A stretch of DNA of 64,000 nt, taken from assembly GCF_031769215.1 (NCBI RefSeq), contig NW_026781952.1:124001-188000 (forward strand). The letters are read 5' to 3'. The position numbers and the translations under genes were made by a program. A model generated the notes under the pieces. The model did no database searches and was not told where the DNA came from. It saw only the letters and a list, made by a program, of their open reading frames with translations. Shown piece by piece: positions 6,001-31,347 of this stretch; positions within the stretch are counted from its first letter, which is position 1; each line of letters opens with the position of its first letter. Source of the DNA: Ylistrum balloti (Eukaryota).

Positions 6001-9000
6001 TGATGCATGTACCAATTTAAACCCCATAACTCAATATAATATTTATTCGATATTATTATATTTTGTATTTTTTAAAATTTTATTTCATATCATTAATATT
6101 TAATATAATAATATGGCCTGAACTTTCCATGTGAGAGACAGAAACTCCCGAGTGTCGCCCAAATTTCCAACATCTTAATCATGTGAGATATTTTACAGAC
6201 AGACGATGGAGTTAAACGCATACATCCAGGATCTAGGCAGCAGTTGTTCTGTGAACCAAGTCATGAAAAGGTATTGCAATGTTATAATAAAATATCAAAA
6301 TTAATTGTTTTTGAGCTTGTTTAAGATTAGAGATAAATTAAATTAACTTGTATCTGGGGATCAATAAGTTTGTTAAATTGTTCACAAAGTATGCTGTTTT
6401 TTCAATGCATTTGTTTCTTATATAACTGTAGAAAGTAATTACAGAAATGAACATTGGTGTGCTGAGATGTTTCATTGAATTAAATCACAGTGTGAAAATA
6501 TGTAAATAAATCTACACTCAGTCATTTCTGTTGCCAATTCAAAAATGTTACCAGTAGCATTAACATATGGTTTGAATGTAAGTCTCTTTCTTCAGTACCA
6601 CATGAGTGATACCTGTGACCTTTAAACCTGTGACCGTCAAACTCGTGACCTTCAAACTTGTGACCTTCAAACTATCTTTCCACAGCATTCCGACGGATAT
6701 ATCTGTAAGAGGATGGGTAATTTCCTTGTTACTACACTTCCAAACAGATAGCCCCGCCCACACTGCAGTGGTGCAGGGATTGATGGATACAATGATTGAC
6801 AGGTACAAGGAAATGACTTCAGCTCACAAAGGCACTACATTCCCAAATTCCATGGCTCATCGTCAGAAAAACCGTGCTTTCCAATTCTTTGTAATGTTGG
6901 AACCCTTCATTGTGCAGGTAAAATAAGCAATATATTGGGAAGCGGTTAAATATATATTTTAGTTGTTTTATTTGTGTACTTCCTTAGGGATAGAATTAGT
7001 GTCTGTCATTTCTTCTTTTTCATCTATTCTTCATTACTGTCATAAAGGGCATCAGACCATTGTTGGATCAGATCCATGAAATCTACCTCATACATCCTGT
7101 CAATTTTTCTGTATAGCATGTCCTTTTATCATAGCCAGCAAGAGTGATGAGAAGTTGATGAAGTTTGTTGATGAAGTGTTGTAAAATAGATGAAAGTTTT
7201 TAACAAAACTACCAGATTTGTTGTATCAACCTGGTAGGACATTCTGGTGGTCAGATTGAATGGTTTTGATGTTGAAAATAACAGGGATGAAAAACCCATT
7301 CAAAAGGTTTTTGCATTTAGTGACAGCTTTCTGATTTGTCAAAATTTGAATGTAGTTTTGATCGATTTTGTATGAAGACACATAATGATTCATTAAACTC
7401 TATCAACCTTCTGATAGAATCATTTAACTATTTACACACATCATCAGAATTCAGACACCACAGTGTTTTTACAAAACATTATTAACATGTTCTTGTTAAA
7501 ATGATAACTTGTTAATAGTCTTGGTTTCTTGAATATCATATTTTTGGATATAAGTATTCTGAAAAGTGAGTTTGAAGGATAATTATATATTACAGGAAAA
7601 TGTGGATAGGATGTGGAAGATGTGTAGAGATGTAATGGGACAGCCGAACCAGCCTTCCATCCGTAATCTGGTACAGTGGCTGATGCTCCGTCTAATCCTT
7701 AGGTTTGACTACCTTCTGGATAAACTCATCTGTATGTTTGTAGATGTAAGTATTTCATTAATGATTTAAGTTTTATGGTTCTTACAATAAATTGTATCTA
7801 TTTACAAAGTTTGGGTGCAGAGGGTGGAAGTGGGGGGGGGGGGGGGGGGGGGGGGAACAGTGGCAGTGGAATAGTTCCTCTGACTAGGACCTCTGACTGT
7901 CTTTATCACTTGCCCTCCACGTCTGAGTTCAGTCGATGGTTTTTCTTCAGGAACTTGACATTTCCTCCAACACCTAAACCTGCAAATCCTAAAGTGACCC
8001 AGGTGTTAATAGAACCTAAAGCAACAATAAACCAAACCAGCCTTTACATTAGTGACAGTCAGTAAAGCTGAAGAATGTTATATGTAGTGTAGCAAACACC
8101 CGTATCACTAAGACAAATTACAGTTGATATTAATGTCATTCGTATTATTGTCATGTTATTTCAGTTGAATGAGTAATATGTAATGTAGCATACACCCTTA
8201 ACTCTAACATGAATCACAGTTGATATTAATGTTATTCATATTATTGTCGTGTTATTTCAGTTAGATGAGTAATATGTAATGTAGCATACACCCTTGACTC
8301 TAACACGAATCACAGTTGATATTAATGTTATTCCTGTTATTGTCATGTTATTTCAGTTGGATGAGTAATATGTAATGTAGCATACACCCTTAACTCTAAC
8401 ACGAATCACAGTTGATATTAATGTTATTCCTGTTATTGTCATGTTATTTCAGTTGGATGAGTAATATGTAATGTAGCATACACCCTTAACTCTAACACGA
8501 ATCACAGTTGATATTAATGTTATTCCTGTTATTGTCATGTTATTTCAGTTGGATGAGTAATATGTAATGTAGCATACACCCTTAACTCCAACACGAATCA
8601 CAGTTGATATTAATGTTATTCCTTTCATTGTTGTGTTATTTCAGTTGGATGAGAAAAACACAGTAGTAATATGCAGTCTACTTTGTACACTAGCCTTATT
8701 GGGACCACACCTCACAGAGAGCAAACAGGTATGCCAGATCATAGTATGGTATGGTCTCTGTCCACAATAGTTTTAGACAAAATTTTTAAAACTTTTATAT
8801 CACAGAATGATAGTATGTGCCCTATACACAAAAACCAATAAAAGGCAACTCAAGGGATCAAAATAGAAAAGAATTTCAAAAATAACCCTCAAAGAGATGA
8901 ACACTTTGCATGATGAGTAGTCAGCTGTTATGATATATGCTCTGAATCATACACCCTAAGACTTTCGTTAATATCACTTACCCAAAGGTGAAGGTCATAA

Positions 9001-12000
9001 ATCAAATATCGCTTTTATTAAACTATCGCTAAAATGTACGCTACAATGTGGTCCTTTGTATTATTCTTTCCTGCTGCTTTATAGAAGTAGTTCTCTACAA
9101 CAGCTACAATATAAATACTGTGAAGTGTATGTGACATTTTTGTCATTCTCTACATCTGTAGACACAATACTACATGTTGAACTCTCGAATGTTTGTAGAC
9201 ACAATACTACATGTTGAACTCTCGAATGTTTGTAGACACAATACTACATGTTGAACTCTCGAATGTTTGTAGACACAATACTACATGTTGAACTCTTGAA
9301 TGTTTGTAGACACAATACTACATGTTGAACTCTCGAATGTTTGTAGACACAATACTACACCTCAGCAGTGTCAGCAGTACTACCCTGGTGTATGGCACAC
9401 CACTTCAATACAAGGATTCATGCCCAAGTTGCCATGATGAAAATGTGGTCCCAATGTCACACATTAGGTATTAGCCAGGTCCTCACCTCCTTTCCATTCC
9501 TTGACTCAGTTTCACGTTTCATTGAGGAGAGCAAGTAAGGCTTTGTTTATCATGTAATGCACCTATTTAGGTAAAATACTTTTTAAAATACCAGTTTTCA
9601 TGGTTGGGACTAATTTATAGGATTGCAACATTGTACAATGCTGCCTTGTTAAAATTTTGAGACTAAGTAAGAAAACATGTTTATCCAATTTTGTTTATAC
9701 ACAATGTATATATTTACAGGCACTTGTGAATTAAAGAAGATTATAGCTTTAATATTTGCTTGGTATTTTATTGAAAGTTTGGTGTAATTTTAATAAACTA
9801 GAATGAAGTGGAATCATTAAAAAACTATGCTGTGTATTCAAAATAAGGGTCCAGTGATGATGGAAATGGGGCACAAAACCCTTGTGCTGTTCTGCTTCAA
9901 GTTACATATATAAAGGACACAAAAATTAAGCATCATAAATATAGGTGATTTTTTCTGACATTAAAATAAATGAAGCTTGACACTCCTTGATCACTGTTTT
10001 ATCACCAATGTATGCACAATTACTTTTCCATAACAATTAGTGTGGCAAGATATCATGTAACACAGGCTTACAATCAAAGAGTATTTTCATTGAAAGTCTG
10101 TGTAGACTTAACACCATATCAGTCAACAAATTTTGTGGTTATTCTAAATGTCCTGTCATTTTGTTTCCTGTTTTAAAAATTGGTTAACATGAGAAGTCAC
10201 ATGACAGCTGCAGATGCTGTCGGAGCAAGCAGGACATTTACAACAAACTGGCTGCACACTTCAATGTGTCACATAGTGTCTTTTCTTGATTATAGAATCG
10301 GTTCTAGATGAAAAAAGGTGATTCCCAATTTTTGTGCACAGTATAGTTTAATTGACGATATTAAGAATTATAATATAGAATGTTAGATATTTCATTACAT
10401 CATTTAGAATATAGTTAATACAAAGTACTAAATATTCTATTGTGAAGTTTACATACTTGATATTAGATGTTTATTTATAACTTGTTCTGTTTACAGAAAC
10501 TACAATTCTACAAAAAATCTCACCAAACTGACAGAAAACTTTTTCATGAAGGATTTTGACTTTGAACGGGACTTCAGTATCGAGGTAAAAACTCTTTTAT
10601 ATAGCTGAAGATGAACTCCTAGCCATTAAACTTTTTCATTTATGTATTTTAAATCTGTAAATAAATAAATCTGCCCATATTTTGAATTCTTTTGGAAATG
10701 ATGAATATCCTATAAAGTTTGCCCTTAATTAGAATAGTGTTTTGTAAGTTTCTTGTTTCTACTTTCTTTTTTACTTAATGACATCACATCATCTTGGTAA
10801 ATGACAAGATAATCTTCAAATACACTCTGTTTGATGTTCATATTTGTTTTTAATCTATCAACAGTGTTATTTGATGACACACTATATAACATGTGTAACT
10901 TCTCTATGGAAATTGTAGGAAAGTTATAAGGACAATGTCCTTTTAAAAAAAACCTAGATATATGATTTTGATTGTATAAATTGCTGTCTTGTTATGGATT
11001 TGAGGTACCAAGTTAGTAAATGAACACATTTCGTAATGTATACCAGGAAATTTTCACCCTCAAATGTTTGCTGTTTTTTGTCCATGACAGGAAGTGAATT
11101 TAAGATGGAGGCAAGAATTTGTTGCAATTTATAAAACCTTTTGATGTCTTGAATATCCTAAGGTGAAATCAACATGAGGCAAATTCATGCATAATGGTAC
11201 AGGGACAAAAATATCCCCAAACATTTCTCAAAACACACCTGTATACCTGTATTTTGGAACAGATAGTTTCCTTCCTATAAGCCCAGAGTGTGACATACAT
11301 CTTGTTATATATGTTGTTGTAGACTATTTTCCACACTCTACCTCGTCTAGCCTGTCTCATGGATGACGAGTGGATACAACCCCAGACATTCCTGGAGGAC
11401 GGAGCTACAAAGGAAACTAAACCCTGGATACCTGTCCTTAACCCGGCGAACTTGCTGGCAAGCTCTGAGGCTGGCACTTGGAAAATAGCACAAAATAGTA
11501 AGAACTGTGGAAATGTTGTCTAAAAATTGAAATTTGATGGGTAGCTTAAGGTAGGCTTAACAACATGTGTTTACTCAGGAGATATCATGTCATTTATCAA
11601 AATTTGATATAGTGCCTATTGTTTACACTAAAACCTAGATGTATTGTCTATATATTATATCTATAATATGGGACGAACATTCCATGTAATAAATGGAAAA
11701 TGATAGTAAGGGGGCTGTGGTGGCTAAGTGGTTAAGGCATATCACCATCTTTATCACTAGCCCTCCACCTCTGGGTCACAGGTTCAAGGCCTAAGAGGGA
11801 CAGTTGCAAGGTCAGTGGTTTTTTCGAGGAACTCGGGCTTTCCTCCAACACCAGAACTTGGCAAGTCTTTAAATGACCGTAGCTGTTAATAGGACTTAAA
11901 GCAACAATGAACTGTTATATATAATTATAGTTATGTCTAAATGTATTCTTACTATATAGCCATTGAAATCTGCTCCAAATAGTGGCAGACACTAACAAAG

Positions 12001-14257
12001 TTTGACTGTACTAAATGTTGTATCACAGCCAGAGCTCCTGTTTAGCTTGCACTCATTGTTTGATGTATGAATGTTTTGTTACCCTTTTGACATCATCCTT
12101 TTCCACTGTGACAGATACAGCTGCTGGAGAAGAAGAGGATGAGGAAGAGGGCGGAGACTTTCAGAAGAAGATCATGCCATGGCGAATGATGACACCTGAT
12201 GAAGAAGCACAAGAAGAACTTGACTTCTGTAAGAAGCGCCATCAGGCAGGAGGATTAGTCTTGGTTACCTCCCTTATAGAGAAGCTCCCCAACCTTGGAG
12301 GTATGTCAGAGGTCATTAGTGGTGGTTATCACCAATTAAGGTCCTTCCATCTTTACCAGAATGCATTCATTCCTTCAATTATCTTAATGTCATATGCTGT
12401 TGCAGTAGTCATTAAAATCTCATTTTTGCATAATTTGATGTACAGTGGAACTCCAACTCGGATAATGCCATTTAATATACTGTTGAGTATTTCTATGGTC
12501 CAAGCTCAAAATCCTTTTTTATCTTATCAACAAAAGTTTAGAAAATCCAACTCAAAAAACTTGGTTATCCTGAAGTTAAATGTATATATCAGCAGTGCTT
12601 ATCCCACTATATAAAAGTACCTGTTATCCTGCTTATATCACAATGCACAGTCAAGCATAACTTACCTCCACATTTGATACGACAACCTCACTCTGATACT
12701 CTGGCTAATGTTTTCACAGGATCATATATGGCTTTGATATCAATAGAGAAATTAAGAGATTAAATATTGCGGAGTTGTCAAGTGTCACACTTACAGATAT
12801 CTGGCTTTAGGAGTGATGTTTCTTTCTTTTGTGTGAACTGAACTGAAATATCTTCAGCTACATGTCTGGTCTGAAACTGTTTACCACAAGGTCTGTGTTG
12901 ATACACATATTTGATGTAATATGATGGACAAATAAAGAGTTAACTGTTACTATACAATCCTTATGTAATCTTGTTCTGTTTACAGGTCTGTGTCGTACAA
13001 GCGAAATCTTTGGCGTGTCAGAATTTGTTATAGGCAAGATGAAATACCTGGAAGACAAAATGTTTCAGACCCTCAGTGTGACTGCAGAGAAATGGCTGCC
13101 AATCTCTGAGGTAGGAAACTAATAGATAGTCTTTATATTATGTCTCCTGAGAAGATTCTATTGTTTTGTATCAGTCCATTCCATCACGTCGTGTCCCATT
13201 CCGTAGTTGGGAAGGAGGAACATTATTATATGCTTACATGACCATAAAACATCTGAGTGGTATCAATTAAAATACACATTGGTGAGATATCAGAGAAATG
13301 AATAAAAGTGGGTCCGACTGATGATAGAAACCTGGGTGGTCGATGGCACAAATTTCACATTTCTCCAGCAGAAACTGTATAAAGAAATATTAATAACATA
13401 TTGTACAGAATTAAGACATTATATTTACACATTTTATTAGTTTTTATTACATTTGATTGTAGGTTTATAAGACAAAGCTGACAACTTTCCTAGCAGAGAA
13501 GAAGCAGGCAGGTTACACATTAGTAGGAGTGGAACAGACAGCCAATTCAGTCTCCCTAACAGATTTCCAGTTCCCCTTCAAGTCTCTTCTCCTTCTTGGG
13601 TAAGACTGCTTTTTAAAGATGTTTTTAGGGATATTTTCAAATCAGTTAAGATATAGAATTTATAACCTGGCAGGACATACTGTAAACATACTTATTTTGA
13701 TACCATAAAATTATGCAATTTATCACATACTTTTTAGAAAATAAAAACTAGGATGAATTCAAACATCAACAATAATGTTAAATTGCTTTATAAACACATA
13801 CAGAAATAGAGTTAGCGGAGTCATATTTGAAAATTTCATTATGAATAGAGCTGGAAATGATGGGGACAAAATTTATACGTTAACAGTTAGTTAATTGTGT
13901 TGTTCCATCAAAGTCCCTAAAGACACCATGATTTGACCAGTTATTTTAAGACATCCTGAGTATTTTTCAGGTCTCATTCATATGCGAATGTTTTCCCTTG
14001 GTTCACAAACAGGAAATTTGTCGAGCTATTTTTGTATAAATTTCTGTGTAAAGTGACTCTGTAACTGTGTTTTCAGGAATGAGCGTGAAGGTATACCTGT
14101 GGAGCTGATCAATATGTTGGATGTATGTGTGGAGATTCCGCAGCAGGGAATCATCCGCTCACTCAATGTTCATGTCAGTGGAGCGTTACTTGTGTGGGAG
14201 TACCGACGTCAACAATTGGTCAGAGAACAAATTGATTCTCCCGGAGAAGGTCATTGA
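1..14257 (+). CDS. TARBP1: TARBP1/Trm3-like tRNA (guanosine-2'-O)-methyltransferase, SpoU family; 5' end lies upstream of the window; 18 exons seen
   Basis: Phase-consistent GT-AG exons: <1-207, 467-567, 1781-1927, 2728-2912, 4041-4236, 4813-4995, 5194-5366, 6199-6270, 6686-6917, 7596-7745, 8645-8728, 9347-9534, 10497-10584, 11323-11497, 12115-12300, 12986-13110, 13463-13599, 14077-14257 (TGA). C-terminal SpoU domain: [25 protein letters not shown]...[10 protein letters not shown]...LLLLGNEREGIP...[26 protein letters not shown]. Upstream [23 protein letters not shown] and [18 protein letters not shown] match recalled TARBP1 segments. The 5' exons are less certain. Confidence 0.93.
672..1530. 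repeat. Minisatellite, 67-bp unit, about 13 copies (TARBP1 intron)
   Basis: ATGTTGATGT recurs at 781, 848 and 915. Confidence 0.95.
3143..3618. repeat. Minisatellite, 37-bp unit GGAGTTGTTAGAGGTATTTCATTGTTAAGCTAAGTCT, about 13 near-identical copies
   Basis: The unit starts at 3143, 3180 and onward. Confidence 0.97.
4255..4640. repeat. Degenerate minisatellite, about 31-bp unit, starting just after the TARBP1 donor at 4237
   Basis: Variants of AATATCAAGTAAGGTCTACCTCTGATGAGTC recur. Confidence 0.85.
7853..8040 (+). mobile_element. Degenerate second copy of the same SINE family, preceded by a 24-nt poly-G run (7832-7855)
   Basis: It shares TTTATCACT..CCCTCCAC.TCTG, GGTTTT..C..GGAACT, TTCCTCCAACACC and TGTTAATAG.AC.TAAAGCAACAAT with 11710-11912. 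Confidence 0.55.
8090..8653. repeat. 96-bp tandem repeat, about 6 copies, that includes a TARBP1 splice acceptor
   Basis: TTATTTCAG ends at 8164, 8260, 8356, 8452, 8548 and 8644; the last is the real acceptor. Confidence 0.93.
9158..9359. repeat. 37-bp tandem repeat, about 5.5 copies, that includes a TARBP1 splice acceptor and exon start
   Basis: GTAG|ACACAATACTACA recurs with AG ending at 9161, 9198, 9235, 9272, 9309 and 9346. Confidence 0.93.
11710..11912 (+). mobile_element. tRNA-derived SINE with a V-domain-like core
   Basis: A box TGGCTAAGTGG (11721-11731) and B box GGTTCAAGGC (11781-11790), then GGTTTTTTCGAGGAACTCGGGCTTTCCTCC, which resembles the V-SINE core. A related copy lies at about 7853-8040. 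Confidence 0.65.
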
Positions 14258-19729: not shown

Positions 19730-22700
19730 CTACGTTGTTATATGGTCCCTGTTTGGTGGGGCAGGTTCTATGTCCTCCTGAACTGGTGAAGTCCCAATAA
19801 TCCCCTGGACTTGACAGTTTGGTAACATATCCCTGATTAAATCAATTACAACTTCCGGATCTTCTACACCCTTCAAATCATCCAATCTTAAACACTTCAA
19901 ATTCCTGAAACATGAGATAGGACATTTCATACCATCCTGAAACATGAGATAGGACATTTCATACCATCCTGAAACATGAGATAGGACATTTCATACCATC
20001 CTGAAACATGAGATAGGACATTTCATACCATCCTGAAACATGAGATAGGACATTTCATACCATCCTGAAACATGAGATAGGACATTTCATACCATCCTGA
20101 AACATGAGATAGGACATTTCATCCATCCTGAAACATGAGATAGGACATTTCTACCATCCTGAAACATGAGATAGGACATTTCATACCATCCTGAAACATG
20201 AGATAGGACATTTCATACCATTCTGAAACATGAGATAGGACATTTCTACCATCAAGTTTTTTATTATTCTATATTTTACTACCACCTTCAAAATGCTGTA
20301 CTGTTTCTATTTCATTTTTTATTTAAACATTCATGTCTTCAGAAACATTTTTTCATGACAGGAGTTATCACAATATTTGTGACAACAGGAGCTGTACAGT
20401 ACAGAGAAGATAAGACAATGCAGAGATTGTTGAACAACCAGTAGTGGGACATATCTGCCATATCTGCTTCTTTATGAACAGCTATTCACAGTAGAATAAT
20501 GTCACTTAAAATTCTCACACTTCAAACTATCAATTCTACAGCATGTGAATAACTAGTGCTACCAAGATAAAATAAGGTAAAATATAACACTTTGTTGACT
20601 ACTATTCCTTAACAATTCCACCAGCTCAATGGCACAAGTGGAACTGAAGAAGTTTAAAATATGCATTTCAAGATAGCTGCCATGGCAACAGAAATGACAA
20701 CACTTGGTCAGGACCATCTAAGGATCATTTCATGCAAGATTAAGCTCATTCCCACTAGGGAAACTTGAGAAAAAGTTTGAAATGTCTAAAGTTTCTGCAC
20801 GGCACATGGCAGACAATGATGGCAATAGGTAATCATGATCCTTCAGGTCAGATGACCTAAAGAGTCATATGACTGGCATGACTTAAATCAGAAATAAATT
20901 TAATCTAAGTCAAAAGACAGCTTTTATTGTATATGTATATATACTTTGTTTTCAAATTGTTGTTGTGCTGAAATTTTTAACTTGGCAAGAGTTGCTACTA
21001 TACAATAGATTTTGTCACAGACGCATTTACAGTAAAGAGTTTCATAGTTCACAATTTTACAATTGGTAACATCAAATTGCTATACCAAATTAAATCCAAA
21101 CCAAATAGAATTCATTCTCTATGATTTTGAATAAACTTTCATTCACTGGTGTGAGAATGTTTGTAACATATAGGGTATATATTTGTAACAAGAAATGTTC
21201 TTACTCTAGATGGTGAAGCCACGCCAGTCCCCGCTCTGTCAGTTGGGGACACCTGCTAATATCAAGAAACTCCAGGCTGTCACGAAAAAGTGCAAACTGA
21301 GTCAAACTGAAGTCATCAAAGATGTCATTATCCCAAATACGGATATATCGTACATTCTGTAGGTTTACTGTAATAAAGAAAAACAGTGTCAGGATAGTCA
21401 ATAACACAGTTTGGTAAATTTTCCCATAGTCAAAACATAACCCTGTTCAATTTTTGGCAAATTTTCCAAAAGTCAAAATATACCACTGTACTACTTTTGA
21501 GAAATTTTCCTATTGCCCACACAAATCCATGTACTATTTGCGGAAATTTTCCGAAGGTCAAAACATGCTCCTGTATACTACATTTCACAGAAAATTTTCC
21601 CAAAAAGTCAAAACATGTCCCTGTACTACATTTGGTAGTAATTTTCTAGCTATCTAGTTCTTTCAAAATTATGAACTTGGCCCACTTGCAAGGTCACAAG
21701 GGCCATAATTTGGGCCTCTAGCTTGCTGGAATGAATGACTTAGCTTTGACCTTTTATTTATTAAGAAGAAGCTGTTTGAAGATTTTAACATGTTAGGCCC
21801 TGTGACATTGAAAGTGGGTAAAGGACCTTCAACTGAAAAACACTTGGTAGCCCTTCATCCAAGCATGCTACAGGCCCAAAGTCAGTACCCTAAATTTTTG
21901 GTTATTGAGAAGAAGTTGTTTAAAGATCTTGACACAATTGACTCCCGTGACCTTGAAGGTTGGTCAAGGTCATTCAGTCATTCATTTGAACAAATTTCGT
22001 AGCCTTCATTCAAGCATGCTACAGACCATAAATAAGAACACTGGGCATTTTGGTTATTGAGAGGGAGTTATTTGAACAGAAATTGACACACAATGAACAA
22101 CAGATGAAACCCGATGGCTATAGGTTATCCTTACCCTTCTGGTCAGATGACCTAAAAATTGGCCAGTTCAATTTCAATTATAAATTGGCCTGACAACGTA
22201 ATTACTCAATACTTACCAAAATTCCTGAATGCCTCGAAAACAATAGGTACTCCTGAGAGGTCTAGCCCTTCCACTTTCATGGTTTCTAAGCGACCATCTG
22301 GTTTGAGAAACATTAATGAACTGCCCGACTCTTCTGACAATGGGATCCAGTTCTTAACGCCATCAATTTTTATTTTTCCACCATTGTCAAGAACAAACTG
22401 AGCTGCTGACATATCCGGGCCCAGCGACTCATATCGCTGCATGTCAAAACTGTAGAAACAGAGTTAATGGTACAGTAGTGATGGAGGGTTCAACAATGAC
22501 AACCTCAACCTTTCCTATCTCTAAAATCTAAAAACAAGTATAATACTTCACGCACAAATTTATCTAAAGGGACTACTGATATACAGATTTATCTATAGGG
22601 ACTACGGATATACAGATTTATCTATAGGGACTACTGATATACAGATTTATCTATGGGGACTACGGATATACAGATTTATCTATGGGGACTACTGATATAC

Positions 22701-25700
22701 AGATTTATCTATGGGGACTACGGATATACAGATTTATCTATGGGGACTACTGATATACAGATTTATCTATAGGGACTACTGATATACAGATTTATCTATG
22801 GGGACTACTGATATACAGATTTATCTATAGGGACTACTGATATACAGATTTATCTATGGGGACTACTGATATACAGATTTATCTATAGGGACTACGGATA
22901 TACAGATTTATCTATAGGGACTACTGATATACAGATTTATCTATGGGGACTACTGATATATAGATTTATCCATGGGGACTACTTATATATAGATTTATCT
23001 ATAGGGACTACAGATATGCAGATTTATCTATGGGGACTACTTATATATAGATTTATCTATAGGGACTACAGATATGCAGATTTATCTATGGGGACTACTT
23101 ATATATAGATTTATCCATGGGGACTACTTATATATAGATTTATCTGAAGGGACAACTGATATACAGATTTATCTATAGGGACTACTGATATACAGATTTA
23201 TCTATAGGGACTACGGATATACAGATTTATCTATGGAGCTACAGATATACAGATTTATCTATAGGAACTACTACGGATATACAGATTTATCTATGGGGAC
23301 TACGGATATACAGATTTATCTATAGGGACTACGGATATACAAATTTATCTATGGGGACTACGGATATACAAATTTATCTATAGGGACTACGGATATACAG
23401 ATTTATCTATGGGGACTACTGATATATAGATTTATCTATGATATACAAATTTATCTATAGGGACTACGGATATACAGATTTATCTATGGGGACTACTGAT
23501 ATATAGATTTATCTATGGGGACTACGGATATACAGATTTATCTATGGGGACTACGGATATACAAATTTATCTATGGGGACTACGGATATACAAATTTATC
23601 TATGGGGACTACTGATATATAGATATACTACTTATATATTTATCTATAGGGACTACAGATATATAGATTTATCATGGGGACTACTTATATATAGATATAC
23701 AGATTTATCTATAGGGACTACTGATATACAGATTTATCTATAGGGACTACGGATATACAGATTTATCTATGGGGCTACAGATATACAGATTTATCTATGG
23801 GGCTGCAGATATACAGATTTATCTATGGGGCTACAGATATACAGATTCATCTTTGGGTACTACGGATATACAGAGTTGTCCTTCCAAGCCCAGAATACAC
23901 ACAGGTAGTTCTAGTTTCTGAGATGGCCCTTTATAATTAGCTACAAGGTGTGAACATACTGTATATGTTTGAGTGTCCATTAAACACTCTGAATAAAATA
24001 ATTCAGTATAAAAAGACCATAAAAAAAAGAAGGCAGTTGATTCAATTAGCAAGTAAATATTCTTTTCAACAATAGTGATGTTTGATGGTTTTCAGTCTTT
24101 TCTGTTCTGATGTATGTCACACTCTCACATATAGAAACCAGTAACACTGAAACTACCATATGGATCAGGCAGACAACTCTGTATATCAGTAGATGGACAT
24201 TTAGTAGAGTTCAATCAAAGTGTATTGATTCTGCTTACTCTTGAAAGGATTTAAGGAGTTATAACTGCTTAAATAGTATTGATTGATGTACTATCACAAA
24301 ATACAGACATTGGGACATCAGCTGTAGCACAAGTTTATGGCAATGAATTGAGCTGAATTTACCTTTGTTTTTTAACTTTATTCTGCCATATCTTCTTCTG
24401 TAACATCTCTTGGATAGACTCTAAAGTGAAATCTTGATATGTTGTCCATTTTGTTTCAGGAGTTGGCTTTCTCAAACTTGCACTCCAAAAATCCACTATA
24501 CGATCAAGTCGAGTTTTCTCGCCTGTGTCGTTAGGTGGTGACGGCTCTGAAGCAGGTGACCGGTGTGAAGTAGATTGGTATAGCATTTTTTTAAAAGTAG
24601 TAGACATTCTTTTTAATGAATTACGCTTGAACAGGCATCTCTGGAATAAAAAGAATAAATTTTGTGGTGCTGTAGAAAGATTATTTTCCAACAAGTCCTG
24701 GTAAACAAACTAACATGTCCTAAATTCACCTTGAAACAGATAGAGTGTGCTATTGACAGGCCATTGTCCACACTGTAGGTCAGACTGACTTCAGTCAAAA
24801 CATACTAAGTCAGAAGGTCATTGTCCACACTGTAGGTCAGACTGACTTCAGTCAAAACATACTAAGTCAGAAGGTCATTGTCCACACTGTAGGTCAGACT
24901 GACTTCAGTTAAGTTCAATTAAGTTGTCTCACTTTTTGTATAAATGGCCCAGAGGGCCTGTATTGCCTGCCTGGGTATTTAAGTCAACAATGCAAAACTT
25001 CACATTTCTTTAGAAGAAAAATATTTCCCCTGATGAGCCTTACCCCACAGATGCAGCTTCAAATTCCCTAGGGGTGGGGACAAAGATCAGATGTTAATAT
25101 CTTGATGTCCAGCAATGTTATTAAGTTATGGGATGGTAATCTCAATGGCTTCAAAGACAAATTATCAGTTATGATTGTGTTTATCTCCATGTGCTCAGAT
25201 ATGCTATAGATACTCAGCGGGGATCACTTTAAAGAAATTGATAGATTTTACCTATTGATCCCCGCCCATCTAGCCCCACGGGGCTCAGACCCCCCACCCC
25301 CTCCTTTATACAAAATTGATTTCATATCACCTAAGGATGCTTCAGACCAAATTTGATGAAAATCTGCTCAGTTGTTCATTAATAATTGCAATATATATTA
25401 AAAGTAGACAGATGATGGTCGGACACCAGACGCCACAGTATCCCAGTAAAGCTCACTTGGCTTTCAGCCCAGGTGAGCTGAAAATTATAAAATTTATCAC
25501 CTCCATTGTTTATCATCTGTTTACAGTGTGGATAAAAACAGAACACATGTAAATTCATGTTCGCCTATGACATTGGTGCTGAATGCTGCCACTGGGTATA
25601 CATTGTAGTCAATGGAGAACAAAGCCAGTGATATATATTGTCAATTTAACACAGAGTTTGATAAAAGAAAAGGATATTCCCTATGTAGTTGTATAAATTA

Positions 25701-26328
25701 TCACATTGGTCATATCAAAAAGATGACACCCTTTTTTGTAGCAAATTTTTTAATGAAATTTGTGTTTCTATTTCAGAATGACAATGCATTTGAGTATCTA
25801 ATTGATGATTACTCAAAACAGTAACTATCCCTCAAATGCAGGACTATTTACCGTATGAGAGGTTGCCCAACCTATTAAAACCCATTGAGTATGTAATTAA
25901 TAGCATAACATTCCCGGAAATATGTGCGTGCACCGACCTTGCTTTATGCAGTATTTTGAAAACTAATGATATTCAGCCATGTTGTTTCCGACAGGAATGA
26001 CCGGACCCCTCAAACTGCACGTGCCGAATAATCAACAGTCTAGCATCTTTGCTGATATATAACTGATGTTTTTTAAGCGTGTACCTAGGTATATGTTGAG
26101 GGTTTAGCCAGTCCGAAAAACAACAATCACAAAATTCAAGGTGAACTACCCCTAAAGCTGCGCTTTCATATAAGTATAGAAAAGTAAAGTCTAATCTACG
26201 TTTGTATGAACCCTACGCTACTAATGTTTTAAGTGTTGGAAAATAAAGTAAGAAGATACACTCTGTGAATATGAATGGTAGCTAGCATGCGAAAAAACTT
26301 TACGTACCCGTCCAGTTAAGGAAGCCAT
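19730..26328 (-). CDS. DMAC2: Distal membrane-arm assembly complex protein 2 (ATP5SL), mitochondrial complex I assembly factor with LRR-like fold; 5 coding exons
   Basis: Minus-strand exons 26328-26308 (MASLTGR), 24640-24363, 22449-22217, 21367-21205, 19904-19730 (TAG), intron phases 0,2,1,2. Motifs RYESLGPDMSAAQFVLDNGGKIK, DSLEFLDISRCPQLTERGLAWLHHLENLKCLRLDDLKGV and MLPNCQVQG match recalled DMAC2 ([27 protein letters not shown]...MLPNCEV). Confidence 0.85.
19904..20252. repeat. 32-bp tandem repeat, about 11 copies, that includes the DMAC2 last-exon acceptor
   Basis: CCTGAAACATGAGATAGGACATTTCATACCAT recurs at 19904, 19936 and onward; on the minus strand each unit ends TTTCAG|G. Confidence 0.95.
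21660..22160. mobile_element. Fragments of a dispersed repeat (TGACCTT / CAAGCATGCTACAG / GGTCAGATGACCTAA family)
   Basis: CAAGCATGCTACAG occurs twice internally, and GGTCAGATGACCTAA is shared with about 20826-20840. The class is not determined. Confidence 0.35.
22555..23870. repeat. Minisatellite, 29-bp unit GGGACTACTGATATACAGATTTATCTAT(A/G), in a DMAC2 intron
   Basis: GGGACTAC occurs at 22569, 22598 and onward. Confidence 0.95.
24760..24909. repeat. 57-bp tandem repeat, about 2.6 copies
   Basis: CATTGTCCACACTGTAGGTCAGACTGACTTCAGT occurs at 24762, 24819 and 24876. Confidence 0.9.
24942..25484 (+). mobile_element. Helentron-derived non-autonomous (HINE-like) dispersed repeat
   Basis: It starts with GGCCCAGAGGGCC and ends in the hairpin AGCTCACTTGG-CTTTCAGC-CCAGGTGAGCT followed by AAAA, an end structure recalled from bivalve HINE-type repeats. 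Confidence 0.5.
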
Positions 26329-26564
26329 GCTGGATTTTGCTTATGATGCTTAAAAAATGAGAAAAAACTTTACTTTTTGTTAACAAGAATGTAATAAAAC
26401 ATAGTTTACAAATTGATGAAGTATCATATTGGCATTTTATGTGTTATTACAAAGCATAATTAAATTGATATACAATGATATGTAATTTTAATTTGTGGTA
26501 ACTTGAGCGACGCAGTCTGTAGTTTCACTTTAGTCGCTATAAATAGTTTGAGGGACAGAACTCG
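26329..26564. promoter_or_regulatory. Putative bidirectional promoter between DMAC2 and DMAC2L
   Basis: 236 bp separate the divergent ATGs. A TATAAA lies near 26538-26543 and CTGTAGT (ACTACAG on the minus strand) near 26518. TSS positions are not known. Confidence 0.55.
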
Positions 26565-29500
26565 ATGGCAGCAGTACTTTTCGTCAAGGTATGAAAGGAA
26601 GTATACATGTCCGATAGATCAAATATCTAGCAAATCTGAACTAACACACAGTCCTTGGTTGTAATCATTTACATTTTAATACAGTAGTTGTGCTCGTTCA
26701 TCAGACCTAACCGATGTAAAGATGATATTGTAAAGTTGACAAGACCTTGAGATCCAGGCTAAGCCTATGTGGTTGTGTAATATCATATTACTAATGAACT
26801 GTGGCAAACAATGTTTTTATGTCCATATCTCAGATATAACACTTTATGGAATTTATGATATAAATAACGTGCCTTTACCAAACAATCACGATAACATTAT
26901 TCTAGGTGCTCGTTTTTTCATGTTACGTTTTAGAATTGATACCAATCATGAATCTTCTAACGTTTTTATAGTAGTGGAAATGGAGCAAATTCTTCAAAAT
27001 CGTTCTTCTGTAAGAGTGATTCAATTTTGTTTAAATTTGATCTGAATCATCCTTGGGTGAAGTTATAACATTGCATCTAACATCCTTGGGGAAGAGGGAT
27101 GGGGCCTAAAAAGGGAAATAAGATACAAATGTTTTGAATATTTTCCTTTAGTTTAAATGAATCAGTTTCAGCAAACTGAAACAGATGAGCTATGCAGGCC
27201 CTATGGTCCTATTGTTTTAAGTCTTTGTCCCTGAAGACACACTATTTACAACTCATATCTGGGTATCCCCTTGTCAAGCATTCACCTATTTTAAGCCCTG
27301 ATACAATTGTTGTTATCATTATTTCTGGAGAAGAAGTAGATGGATCTCTTACATGTTTCATACATTACTTTCCTTTGGTCCATAGTTATTTCATGAGACT
27401 GATAAAAAAAACCGAGCAGGATGATAAGTGGCCATATTTGAATTTGACACTGAATAATTGTTATCACTATTTCTTGAGAAATACTGGATGGATCCTTCAT
27501 ATGCAAATCTCCATTGGTTCTTATTTGTGTGTTTTATATTTTGGAACTGACCAGGAAGAAAATGCCTCGTGGGTGGCTATCTGTGATTTGTCATTCAAGT
27601 TATCACAATGTGAAAAGAAAGGAAAAGATCCAATTTTTAAAGAACAGATAAAGATCAAAGAATGGTGAATGCTAAAATCCCTTCAGGAGTATCTTGTTGA
27701 AAGATATTGCATTGACATTGAAATATAACATACAGAAGAAACACTACATTGTATGTGGTAGTAGTGTCACATGTTCACTATAAAAATTGCACTGGTCAAA
27801 GTTCATAATGATTATACAGTACTTTCTGAGTTTCTGAAACAATAAACCCATGTATTAGGTAATTACACACCCATACATCATATATATGCACTGTGTTGTA
27901 GGAGTAATTGGTGAATGCAATCTTTTTTGCCAGTAATAAGCTCTTGTAGCTTTTTAGTGAGGAGAAAAGGTTTCTCCCTCAGGGCTCACAGTATTATGAC
28001 TCTGATGTTATAATGTGAAATACCTGGTAGTCAAAAGAGTAACTTGGTGACATTTTCTTGACTTCAGAATTGCCTAAAAACAGTCACATGTGGCCTGCAG
28101 CAGCGAAGCATCCAAGTTCCTCGAACTAAAACTCTTTACACTAGTTGTCCCAACTTAGCACCAACTGGACTATGGATGAGGCTTTTAAGTGTCATCAACC
28201 AGTAAGTAACAAGATGGAAACACCTACATACCAGAATGTACAGCTAAGGTAGTAGATATACTTATATACCAGAGCTAAGGTAGTAGATACACTTATATAC
28301 CAGAATGTACAGCTAAGGTAGTAGATATACTTACATGTATATACCAGAATGTACAGCTAGGGTAGTAGATATACTTATATACCAGAATGTACAGCTAAGG
28401 TAGTAGATATACTTACATGTATATACCAGAATGTACAGCTAGGGTAGTAGATATACTTATATACCAGAATGTACAGCTAGGGTAGTAGATATACTTATAT
28501 ACCAGAATGTACAGCTAGGGTAGTAGATATACTTATATACCAGAATGTACAGCTAGGGTAGTAGATATACTTATATACCAGAATGTACAGATAAGGTAGT
28601 AGATATACTTATATACCAGAATGTACAGCTAAGGTAGTAGATATACTTACATGTATATACCAGAATGTACAGCTAGGGTAGTAGATATACTTATATACCA
28701 GAATGTACAGCTAGGGTAGTAGATATACTTATATACCAGAGCTAAGATAGTAGATATACTTATATACCAGAATGTACAGCCAGGGTAGTAGGTATATGTT
28801 TGTATTACCAGATAATAGGAACCATTCTCCCTGAATCAGATTAGGTATAATATTCTCATTGACTTTTCCTGACAGTAACAATTTGCCTCCTTGATAACAA
28901 GGATAATGTTATCATAGACTTCCTTTCAATGATGATCTGTCACCATAGAGACAGGTAAAATGTTGTGACAGATTTTTCCTTACAATGACAATCTGTGTCA
29001 CAAGAGACATGCATAATGTGCTCACAGACTTTTCCTTACAGTGACTGTTGTTTTTTCCCTGTTAAGGGTGTATCCTCATCGTATTGAAGAAGTAGGACCT
29101 GACCGAGCCTGTGCAGAGTGGTTAGTGAAAAATGGTGGTGCTGTCCGATGGGTGGGAAACCCACACCAAACAGAAACTGACTACAACTTGCTTCCACAGA
29201 ATGTGACACTGAAAATTGAGGAGATCATTTGTGATGAAGCGGTTGTGCTTTCCAATGGCTTTGGATACTTAGGTAAGCTGCGAGACCCAGCTGACATACT
29301 AACATATAGCTCCTTATCAGATGGTGGGCAGTTCAAATCATCCTTTAATTATGGTCTACTATTTGTTCTAAAACAATTATTTACTATTTCTAGAAAAGCA
29401 CTGGCTGGATCATTTTCAATTTTTAGATCAGCAGAGACAAAGTCTCAGGTTGACCTACTGCAATCCAAAATTGTAAATTATATGGTCCCCAACCCCCAGG

Positions 29501-31347
29501 GGTCTCAGGGGCCAAGTCAAAAAGGGTCAAATTGATTGAAACTTCAAAAATCTTCTTCTCAAATCCCAGATATGGTAGAATCAAGTACTCTTCATGGATG
29601 GAAAGGCCTTCAGATGCTTTACCAAAATTGTAAATTTCATGACCTCAGGGTCTCACATTTCCCCCCTGGGGATGAGGTGAAGTTTACTCTGGTTTATAGG
29701 AAAATTACATTTTTGAACATTATTTATTTTCTTTTTGAAACAGTTCAAAACTGGTTAGAATTATTAGTTTAGGATGACAGTTTAATTAGATGCACATACT
29801 GACCTCGACTGACCCCAAGAGACTGTTTTGCGAGGCCAAAACTGGGTCAAATTGACTGAAATTACAAAGATGTTCTACTGTTCCTGGATGGAAGATTCTA
29901 TATAGGAAAATTCAAATCTTGAGACTAATTTCTATTGGTTGAAACTTCTTTAGAAGCCTTAGCGTGGGACAGCAGTTAATATATACACAATTTACTTTTG
30001 TTTTATGTGTACACTGCAGTTAAAGTTATATTGCTTTTTTGAACAAAATCATTTCTATGACATGTTACAAAAAGCACTGTGACTCAAGTGACCATTAAGG
30101 CCCCTTGGGCCTCTTGTTCTGTTTAGTTCCCCTTGGTCCTTAAGTTTGCACTGTTCATTTAAGGACTGATTGTGGAATTGGGAAAATAAAAATGGCTGAC
30201 AGGTGGCCATTTTGTATATTTATAGTATTAGTTAGTCTTTGTCTAAGTTTAAATATAGAAATATATTTCACTATCAACATTACCAAAACTTATAAGTTAC
30301 ACGTGATCTTCATCAAATGCTGTTGTGAACATTTGATTTCTTTTGTATATATTTATCATTTTAACGGTGATACCCCCAGTACTTATCCTTTTCTGATACA
30401 TGCTATTAATAGTCTCCTATATAAATATATGTGTATAATGTTTCAGAAGAAATGATACTGATCTACTAGGCAATTATTTATGAAATTGTACTCAATATTT
30501 TGTTTGTGTAGATTTCTAGCTAATGGTAACAATTTTATAGCAATTTGTCATCTTTTGTTTTGATTGCAATGAGTGCTGTTATTACCAACTAGCTTTAACT
30601 ACTGGTTTTCATTGAATTAATACATTGTTTACCACTGGCAAATTAAGGATTCTAAAGATTTTTTTTTAAACAGGTGGACTCAAGCATGTAAAGCGGTTTA
30701 CTCTACATAATTGTAAATTTGCGTCGGATAGGATGGTCTCCTCATTGTTTTATTTAAGAGACTCCCTGGAACACCTCCAGATCAGCAGCTGTAGGCATGT
30801 CACACAGGACGGCTTAAACAGTCTGGAAGATCTCAGGTATGTTGATGCAATATTACTCTTATGTAACTTATGTTACCTACCCAATAGTTGTATTTAACAC
30901 CTGTCCACAAAAATCACACATCCTAAAGGAATTGATAACACACTTGGTTCATATATATCCCGTAGTAATATAACATCAAGTTCTACAATGTAATAGAAGG
31001 TAAAGGTTAAAAGGGTCAAAGGTCACATTTGACAACTTCTTCAAATGTCATTAAACTATAACAACTACATAAGTGGAAGTGCAGGTATATATATATACAT
31101 ATCCTTACACCGGTAAGTGGATTTTCATCCCAGATGTAAGATGTTTGATTGTACCTGTTCAGTATCATAGTTTTTGGGTTTTTTTTTCAGGAAGTTACAA
31201 TACCTCTTACTGTTTGATTTGGAAAGTATCCGTGACAAAGCTAAATGTATTGAACAACTGAAAGAGAGGCTGCCACCTGACTGTCTCATTGAATTCCCAG
31301 ATACTCCAGTGCCTGGAACCAACAGAAAGTTAAAATCTGGCTCATGA
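26565..31347 (+). CDS. DMAC2L: ATP synthase subunit s / coupling factor B (ATP5S); 5 coding exons
   Basis: Exons 26565-26588 (MAAVLFVK), 28068-28201, 29067-29272, 30674-30836, 31191-31347 (TGA), phases 0,2,1,2. RIEEVGPDRACAEWLVKNGGAVRW matches the recalled factor B motif RIRDVGPDRAASEWLLRCGA. GLKHVKRFTLHNC, SLEHLQISSCRHVT and KLQYLLLFDL match its LRR-like C-terminus. Confidence 0.88.
28225..28800. repeat. Minisatellite, 38-bp unit (44-bp variants) ATATACCAGAATGTACAGCTAGGGTAGTAGATATACTT, just after the DMAC2L exon 2 donor
   Basis: Direct periodicity is visible across 28250-28790. Confidence 0.93.
29380..30118 (-). mobile_element. HINE-like dispersed repeat in DMAC2L intron 3
   Basis: On the minus strand it begins AACAAGAGGCCCAAGGGGCC, like the starts at 24942 and about 27215. 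The left boundary is approximate. Confidence 0.4.

What the first reader, a model, noticed from the sequence alone, without database searches (positions are those of the whole stretch)
19730..31347. Paralogues DMAC2 and DMAC2L (ATP synthase factor B) lie head-to-head 236 bp apart with identical intron positions
Seen in sequence: two related LRR-like mitochondrial genes diverge from ATGs at 26328 and 26565. Both have a tiny first coding exon (21 and 24 nt) and intron phases 0,2,1,2 at aligned positions: S|FDMQRYESLGPD vs Q|VYPHRIEEVGPD, FRNF-V|NLQNV vs FGYL-G|GLKHV, and LHHL-E|NLKCL vs LEDL-R|KLQYL. Established knowledge: DMAC2 is a complex I assembly factor, DMAC2L is complex V factor B, and the human genes are on different chromosomes. 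Inference: this could be the relic of the inverted duplication that founded the family, with one promoter co-regulating a complex I and a complex V factor.
Basis: partly seen in the sequence, partly recalled or inferred. Interest (0 to 1): 0.75.

Follow-up and report, generated by a model that had tools for sequence, protein, structure and literature searches.

The report
Divergent DMAC2 / factor B gene pair
In this scallop genome the genes for a complex I assembly factor (DMAC2) and its ancient paralogue, ATP synthase factor B (DMAC2L), start 236 bp apart on opposite strands; another scallop, an ark clam and a snail share this layout, so it is at least as old as the bivalve-gastropod ancestor and may preserve the duplication that made the family.

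Summary
The window is Ylistrum balloti (scallop). The + gene (26565-31347, 5 exons, 227 aa) is identical to NCBI's 'ATP synthase subunit s, mitochondrial-like'. The - gene (26328-19730, 5 exons, about 289 aa) is NCBI's 'DMAC2-like', plus a 21-nt first exon that the Ylistrum model omits but the Pecten and Argopecten models include. The ATGs are 236 bp apart. Introns 2-4 fall in identical alignment columns with phases 2,1,2, both here and in 13 genes of both families from six phyla.

A maximum-likelihood tree puts the two genes in separate multi-phylum clades (100/100). AU tests reject a scallop-specific duplication (p 0.002) and a mollusc-specific one (p about 0).

The head-to-head pair is also present in Pecten maximus (251 bp), Physella acuta (520 bp) and Tegillarca granosa. 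It is absent within 10 kb in Mercenaria, Lingula, Lineus, Amphiura, Centruroides and Brachionus.

The pair is therefore ancient in molluscs. Whether it is the founding inverted duplication or a stem-mollusc juxtaposition is unresolved. One 61-nt promoter block is conserved with Pecten. I found no paper and no earlier scan note on this arrangement.

The parts
26565..26588 (+). DMAC2L (factor B) exon 1, 24 nt, MAAVLFVK, followed by a phase-0 intron
   Evidence: Read from the sequence. P0001 maps exactly.
28068..28201 (+). DMAC2L exon 2 (134 nt): the rest of a basic, acid-free presequence. Followed by a phase-2 intron.
29067..29272 (+). DMAC2L exon 3 (206 nt), with the VGPDRACAEW motif. Followed by a phase-1 intron.
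   Evidence: Bovine factor B 3dze E 5e-8. 79.2 bits against the factor B profile and 28.5 against the DMAC2 profile.
30674..30836 (+). DMAC2L exon 4 (163 nt), CC-type leucine-rich repeats. Followed by a phase-2 intron.
31191..31347 (+). DMAC2L exon 5, ending in the TGA stop
26308..26328 (-). DMAC2 exon 1, 21 nt, MASLTGR, followed by a phase-0 intron. Not in NCBI's Ylistrum model.
   Evidence: Read from the sequence. Conserved with Pecten exon 1 and with the Argopecten N-terminus.
24363..24640 (-). DMAC2 exon 2 (278 nt): basic presequence plus a family-specific N-terminal extension. A second in-frame acceptor is possible at 24697. Followed by a phase-2 intron.
   Evidence: P0152 maps from 24607.
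22217..22449 (-). DMAC2 exon 3 (233 nt), with the LGPDMSAAQF motif. Followed by a phase-1 intron.
   Evidence: 65.7 bits against the non-mollusc DMAC2 profile and 16.4 against the factor B profile
21205..21367 (-). DMAC2 exon 4 (163 nt), CC-type leucine-rich repeats. Followed by a phase-2 intron.
19730..19904 (-). DMAC2 exon 5, ending in the TAG stop
26329..26564 (.). 236-bp AT-rich region between the two ATGs (about 33% G+C, no CpG island): the presumed shared, bidirectional promoter
   Evidence: The same layout has 251 bp in Pecten and 520 bp in Physella.
26491..26551 (+). The only conserved sequence in the locus that is neither coding nor a repeat: 80% identity over 61 nt with Pecten maximus. 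It ends 14 nt before the DMAC2L ATG and holds TAGTTTCACTTT and CTATAAATAG (TATA-like or MEF2-like).
   Evidence: blastn E 2e-9, alignment A3, motif scans

Best explanation
These are the scallop orthologues of two ancient paralogues: DMAC2 (ATP5SL), an assembly factor for the distal membrane arm of complex I, and DMAC2L (ATP5S), factor B of ATP synthase. Both are small mitochondrial proteins with CC-type leucine-rich repeats.

Shown here:
- The family arose by a DNA-level duplication, not a retrocopy, because both families keep the same introns.
- That duplication predates the divergence of the protostome phyla sampled on both sides of the tree.
- The two genes lie divergently with about 240 bp between their ATGs, and this layout goes back at least to the common ancestor of bivalves and gastropods.

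Inferred:
- The short spacer works as one bidirectional promoter region, so the complex I factor and the complex V factor are transcribed from the same open chromatin. The conserved 61-nt block next to the DMAC2L start would be part of it.
- The adjacency is most simply a leftover of an inverted tandem duplication that was broken up in other lineages.
For: - Gene models.
- Identity to NCBI proteins of Ylistrum balloti.
- Homology of the whole LRR domain: the DMAC2 profile hits bovine factor B at E 1.8e-30.
- Tree: 100/100 split into two multi-phylum clades. The quick tree of 83 proteins gives the same split.
- AU tests reject a pectinid-only clade (dlnL 55.8, p 0.0019) and a mollusc-only clade (dlnL 102.5, p about 0).
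- Profiles built without any mollusc sequence classify the - gene as DMAC2 (183.7 against 95.4 bits) and the + gene as DMAC2L (197.1 against 105.7).
- Introns 2-4 lie in identical columns and phases in 13 genes of both families.
- Head-to-head pair: Pecten maximus, Physella acuta, Tegillarca granosa.
- Conserved promoter block.
- PRPF39 lies next to DMAC2L in scallop, Physella and Lingula, so the DMAC2L side of the locus is a stable anchor.
Against: - No partner gene was found within 10 kb in Lineus, Mercenaria, Lingula, Amphiura and Centruroides or Brachionus. Sepia is inconclusive because its introns exceed 10 kb. On a simple count of events, one gain in stem molluscs is cheaper than many losses.
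- No vertebrate DMAC2 sequence was in hand, so the name of the DMAC2 clade rests on NCBI annotation.
- There are no transcript data. The TATA-like element lies only 27 nt before the DMAC2L ATG, which sits oddly with a TATA-driven start upstream of that ATG.
- The CTAWWWWTAG motif is not enriched in the window (3 found, 2.35 expected).
Confidence: 0.6

Rival explanations
1. Secondary juxtaposition. The two ancient paralogues were already apart, and a rearrangement in the mollusc stem lineage placed DMAC2 head-to-head next to DMAC2L. The adjacency is then old, but it is not the founding duplication.
For: The pair was seen only in molluscs and is absent in six other lineages. In Lingula, PRPF39 abuts DMAC2L directly, whereas in Physella DMAC2 lies between them. 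That difference fits an insertion as well as it fits a loss.
Against: Bringing two specific paralogues into exact divergent adjacency by chance is very unlikely, while breaking up an old pair is common. In Lineus both genes are on records of identical length (29,083,594 bp), so almost surely on one chromosome. That fits former linkage.
Confidence: 0.3
2. Recent lineage-specific duplication. Both scallop genes are copies of one gene, made in scallops or in molluscs.
For: The genes are adjacent, have identical intron positions and both have a 163-nt exon 4.
Against: The two genes fall in different 100/100 clades that each hold several phyla. AU tests reject both constrained trees. The paralogues are only 32-37% identical in their best-aligned exon segments. 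The shared gene structure is found across the whole family.
Confidence: 0.01
3. Neighbours without shared control. The genes are back-to-back, but each has its own core promoter and its own regulation. The layout would then persist by inertia in slowly rearranging mollusc genomes, not by constraint.
For: The spacer varies between species (236, 251 and 520 bp). The conserved block lies on the DMAC2L side only. Mercenaria lost the layout without losing DMAC2L.
Against: The adjacency has persisted since at least the bivalve-gastropod ancestor, while the flanking gene order changed: PRPF39 is downstream in scallop and upstream in Physella. Starts less than 1 kb apart usually share a nucleosome-free region (established knowledge on bidirectional promoters).
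Confidence: 0.3

Closest known systems
Bovine/human factor B (ATP5S, DMAC2L; PDB 3DZE, 3E2J, 3E4G)
   Same: The + gene product aligns over the GPDRA motif and the LRR domain. It groups with fish, echinoderm and arthropod factor B. It has the 5-exon structure found in the other factor B genes mapped.
   Different: It is about 41-47% identical to arthropod and echinoderm orthologues. From my own recollection, untested: the mammalian vicinal Cys pair (LCKCH) reads LHNCK here, so only one Cys is kept. Coupling activity is untested in any mollusc.
DMAC2 (ATP5SL), assembly factor of the complex I PD-a module (PMC10910544 table; bioRxiv 10.1101/697185)
   Same: The - gene product groups with proteins named DMAC2 in Lineus, Tachypleus, Centruroides and Sepia. 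It has the longer N-terminal region and the LGP(D/E)L..A..F and DD(W/F)CL motifs of that clade.
   Different: Orthology to vertebrate DMAC2 was not tested directly. No solved DMAC2 structure exists to compare with. Its role in complex I assembly is inferred only.
Head-to-head paralogue pairs with a shared promoter, e.g. COL4A1/COL4A2; and the mitochondrial HSPD1/HSPE1 pair (own knowledge)
   Same: Divergent orientation, a spacer of a few hundred bp, and conservation over very long times.
   Different: The collagen IV paralogues assemble into one molecule, and HSP60/HSP10 work as one machine. Here the two paralogues serve two different OXPHOS complexes. The spacer is AT-rich with no CpG island.

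Membership tests
DMAC2L / ATP synthase factor B (ATP5S) | Sequence homology to biochemically defined bovine factor B | tested here: met
   Exon 3 against 3dze_A, E 5e-8. P0001 scores 197.1 bits against the non-mollusc factor B profile and 105.7 against the DMAC2 profile.
DMAC2L / ATP synthase factor B (ATP5S) | Falls in the clade that holds vertebrate factor B, apart from DMAC2 | tested here: met
   24-row clade at 100/100 that includes Gadus, echinoderms and arthropods
DMAC2L / ATP synthase factor B (ATP5S) | Mitochondrial matrix targeting and binding to the Fo sector | not testable with these tools
   The N-terminal 53 residues have six Lys/Arg and no Asp/Glu. This fits a presequence, but no predictor or experiment was available.
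DMAC2 (ATP5SL) | Groups with DMAC2 of other phyla, not with factor B | tested here: met
   14-row clade at 100/100. Names from NCBI. P0152 scores 183.7 bits against the DMAC2 profile and 95.4 against the factor B profile.
DMAC2 (ATP5SL) | Orthology to vertebrate DMAC2, the protein shown to assemble complex I | not tested
DMAC2 (ATP5SL) | Association with the PD-a assembly intermediate of complex I | not testable with these tools
   Known for the human protein (bioRxiv 10.1101/697185; PMC10910544). No mollusc data.
Bidirectional-promoter gene pair | Opposite strands, with starts less than 1 kb apart | tested here: met
   236 bp from ATG to ATG. 251 bp in Pecten and 520 bp in Physella.
Bidirectional-promoter gene pair | Mapped transcription starts inside the spacer, and correlated expression | not testable with these tools
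Bidirectional-promoter gene pair | Arrangement conserved between distant species | tested here: met
   Pecten, Tegillarca and Physella. Not present in six other lineages.

The most novel reading that the evidence does not exclude
The mollusc locus preserves the original inverted tandem duplication that created the DMAC2/DMAC2L family before bilaterians diverged. It has been held together since at least the bivalve-gastropod ancestor because one short bidirectional promoter ties the supply of a complex I assembly factor to that of a complex V factor. All other animals sampled, vertebrates included, have lost this coupling.
Probability: 0.35. Interest if true: 0.6.

Novelty: new member of a known kind. 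Interest (0 to 1): 0.42.

Why it matters
DMAC2 and factor B are poorly understood LRR proteins that serve two different OXPHOS complexes. A locus where they are still physically coupled gives a concrete picture of how the family arose: a DNA-level inverted duplication that kept all the introns. It also offers a natural system for asking whether biogenesis of complex I and complex V is co-ordinated at the level of transcription. In addition, it marks a tight microsynteny block (PRPF39-DMAC2-DMAC2L) that could be useful for lophotrochozoan comparative genomics. It is a tidy evolutionary observation, not a new mechanism.

Tried and rejected
- Pfam on single exons and on the full proteins gave no family.
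Transcription starts, the exon 1-exon 2 joints and co-expression remain untested.
- Two contig look-ups failed because the proteins were minor isoforms (Bacillus and Gadus).
- Sepia: introns exceed 10 kb, so the result is inconclusive.
- Tegillarca: DMAC2 exons 1-2 could not be located, so the ATG spacing there is unknown.
- TATA/MEF2-like motif: not enriched in the window, so only its position and its conservation are notable. The TAGTTTCACTTT core occurs only in Pecten among the fetched loci.
- Rfam: nothing in 18-33 kb. The bacterial-type promoter scan is uninformative here.
Full-length work used the database proteins P0001 and P0152, which map exactly onto the window.
- No human contig was fetched or compared.
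- Rejected readings: a recent duplication and an assembly artefact (the same layout appears in four independent assemblies).
Full report
**Observation.** Reading the junctions gives two five-exon genes.

- The + gene has exons 26565-26588, 28068-28201, 29067-29272, 30674-30836 and 31191-31347 (227 codons).
- The - gene has exons 26328-26308, 24640-24363, 22449-22217, 21367-21205 and 19904-19730 (about 289 codons).
- All introns have GT-AG ends, and the phases are 0,2,1,2 in both genes.
- There are 236 bases between the two ATGs.
- The paralogues match beyond chance in exon 3 (37% over 27 residues, E 3e-7) and exon 4 (32% over 50 residues, E 7e-8). They do not match in exon 5.

- Exon 3 of the + gene hits bovine ATP synthase subunit s (factor B, 3dze) at E 5e-8. 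Both exons 4 look like CC-type LRRs of the FBXL2 kind.
- A profile of the two exon-3 peptides, searched against 1.84 billion representatives, returned P0001. This 227-aa protein is letter for letter my + model, and NCBI names it 'ATP synthase subunit s, mitochondrial-like [Ylistrum balloti]'.
- The same search returned P0002, which led to P0152, 'distal membrane-arm assembly complex protein 2-like [Ylistrum balloti]'.
- Both proteins sit on a 647,582-bp contig, so the window is from the scallop Ylistrum balloti.
- An exact spliced mapping places P0001 on my five + exons, and P0152 on - exons 2-5 from an internal Met at 24607.
- The 21-nt first exon of the - gene is missing from that NCBI model. 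It is present in the Pecten maximus model (21 nt, MATLTGQ), matches the Argopecten N-terminus (MANLTGP), and is conserved at nucleotide level with its donor site.
- Both N-termini are rich in Lys/Arg and free of acidic residues, as mitochondrial presequences are. This is read from the sequence; no predictor was run.

**Old or recent duplication.**

- A profile of the DMAC2-like proteins matches bovine factor B over the whole LRR domain (E 1.8e-30). The two families are therefore homologous throughout. The PDB holds no DMAC2 structure.
- A quick tree of all 83 retrieved proteins of 170-400 aa and a careful tree of 38 named or full-length rows both separate two clades. The careful tree used LG+C20+F+G4 on 260 columns and left out fragments, most unnamed Logan contigs and redundant crustaceans. 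Gadus was trimmed to residues 1-103 because the rest of that isoform looks out of frame.
- The careful tree supports both clades at 100/100. The DMAC2 clade holds the four scallops, Sepia, Lineus, Tachypleus, Centruroides and Brachionus. The factor B clade holds the scallops, other bivalves, gastropods, Lingula, Lineus, rotifers, arthropods, echinoderms and a fish.
- AU tests reject a tree with all scallop sequences together (dlnL 55.8, p 0.0019) and one with all mollusc sequences together (dlnL 102.5, p about 0). The second penalty also reflects the non-monophyly of mollusc factor B in the free tree.
- Profiles built only from non-mollusc sequences give the same assignment.
- Caveat: no vertebrate DMAC2 sequence was obtained, so the label of that clade rests on NCBI names.

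**Intron positions.** I mapped 13 database proteins onto their own loci and placed the introns on one alignment.

- Introns 2, 3 and 4 fall in the same three columns with phases 2, 1, 2 in every gene of both families: scallops, ark clam, hard clam, snail, cuttlefish, brachiopod, nemertean, brittle star, scorpion and rotifer.
- Exon 4 is 163 nt in 11 of the 13 genes.
- Most genes have a very short phase-0 first exon (15-36 nt).
It shows a DNA-level duplication of an already five-exon gene, and it says nothing about the age of this locus.

**Is the layout conserved?**

| Species | Result |
|---|---|
| Pecten maximus | 285-aa DMAC2 gene and DMAC2L diverge, 251 bp between ATGs |
| Physella acuta (snail) | 342-aa gene on the opposite strand starts 520 bp from DMAC2L; its exons score as DMAC2 (78.1 against 26.3 bits for exon 3) |
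| Tegillarca granosa (ark clam) | uncalled DMAC2-type exons 3 and 4 on the opposite strand upstream of DMAC2L (82.5 against 19.9 bits) |
| Mizuhopecten | both genes share a 2.82-Mb scaffold; adjacency not checked |
| Mercenaria | no partner within 10 kb; a DIS3-like gene lies upstream |
| Lingula | no partner within 10 kb; PRPF39 abuts DMAC2L |
| Lineus | no partner within 10 kb; NEPRO is the divergent neighbour; DMAC2 is on a record of the same length, so probably the same chromosome |
| Amphiura, Centruroides | no partner within 10 kb |
| Brachionus | no partner within 10 kb |
| Sepia | inconclusive; introns exceed the 10-kb flank |

From established knowledge, not tested here, human DMAC2 and DMAC2L are on chromosomes 19 and 14. 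The pair therefore dates at least to the bivalve-gastropod ancestor. It has been lost at least once within bivalves and has not been seen outside molluscs.

**The spacer.** It is AT-rich with no CpG island. Against the Pecten locus, blastn finds only the ten exons, two interspersed repeats and one non-coding block, 26491-26551 (80% over 61 nt, E 2e-9). The block ends 14 nt before the DMAC2L ATG. It contains TAGTTTCACTTT and CTATAAATAG (CTAAAAATAG in Pecten), which fits both a TATA box and the MEF2 consensus. That motif is not enriched in the window, and its distance to the ATG is short for a TATA-driven start, so I read no more into it than 'conserved promoter-proximal element'. Transcription starts and co-expression are therefore untested.

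**Interpretation.**

- Shown: the gene models, the assignment of the two genes to different ancient clades, the family-wide gene structure, the conservation of the pair in four mollusc genomes, and one conserved spacer block.
- Inferred: a shared bidirectional promoter, and retention from an inverted tandem duplication.
- The main rival is a single juxtaposition in stem molluscs. It needs fewer events on the species sampled, but it requires an a priori very unlikely rearrangement.
- PRPF39 is next to DMAC2L in scallop (43.9 kb onward), Physella and Lingula. From memory, it lies in the same human band, 14q21.3. The DMAC2L side thus looks like the stable anchor and DMAC2 like the mobile partner, whichever way it moved.

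**Prior work.** I found no paper on this arrangement and no earlier scan note. The literature confirms DMAC2/ATP5SL as a factor of the PD module of complex I (bioRxiv 10.1101/697185, PMC10910544) and lists ATP5S as not identified outside opisthokonts (PMC7050145).

**Verdict.** The conserved divergent pairing is new as far as I can tell. It is of moderate interest, and its two most interesting claims (founding relic, co-regulation) remain open.

Noticed in passing
window 19903-20253: A 32-bp tandem repeat (11 copies, 97% alike) abuts the acceptor of DMAC2 exon 5. Every copy carries the same TTTCAG|GA acceptor and also a GGTATGA donor-like site, so the real acceptor is simply the last repeat unit. 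Use of an upstream copy would shift the frame (32 is not a multiple of 3). The repeat was not found in the Pecten locus.
   Followed up: partly
window 43900-50450 (+ strand): PRPF39 exons, with Pfam hits to HAT_PRP39_N and HAT_PRP39_C. PRPF39 is also the direct neighbour of DMAC2L in Lingula (L006) and of the DMAC2/DMAC2L pair in Physella (L007). This is a lophotrochozoan microsynteny block. From memory, both genes lie in human 14q21.3.
   Followed up: partly
L001 (Lineus longissimus OU342994.1, 28.02-28.05 Mb): DMAC2L is flanked by Dicer, an ALKBH-like gene, NEPRO, LIN52 and an aldehyde dehydrogenase. From memory, several of these have human chromosome 14 orthologues, which suggests DMAC2L sits in a conserved ancestral linkage group.
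   Followed up: no
window 22554-23874 and 28228-28796: Large minisatellites lie inside intron 2 of each gene: a 29-bp unit with 46 copies in DMAC2, and 38/82-bp units in DMAC2L. Further arrays lie at 14.1-15.8, 17.5-19.2, 33.8-35.4, 57.1-60.0 and 63.3-64.0 kb. The window is unusually rich in tandem repeats.
   Followed up: no
window 21775-22033 and 25225-25484: Two interspersed repeats in DMAC2 introns match several places in the Pecten maximus locus at 65-77% identity. They are likely old pectinid SINE- or MITE-like elements.
   Followed up: no
window 1-12611 (+ strand): Open frames of an unidentified upstream gene, for example 12015-12611 with an acidic stretch. No Pfam or PDB match.
   Followed up: partly
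L007 9472-9479 (Physella acuta): A perfect CRE palindrome, TGACGTCA, overlaps the DMAC2 start codon in the snail's spacer. It has no counterpart in the scallops.
   Followed up: no
window 24607-24697: NCBI's Ylistrum DMAC2 model starts at an internal Met (24607) and so lacks exon 1. A second in-frame acceptor at 24697 could add 19 codons. Either way the annotation is probably short at the 5' end.
   Followed up: partly
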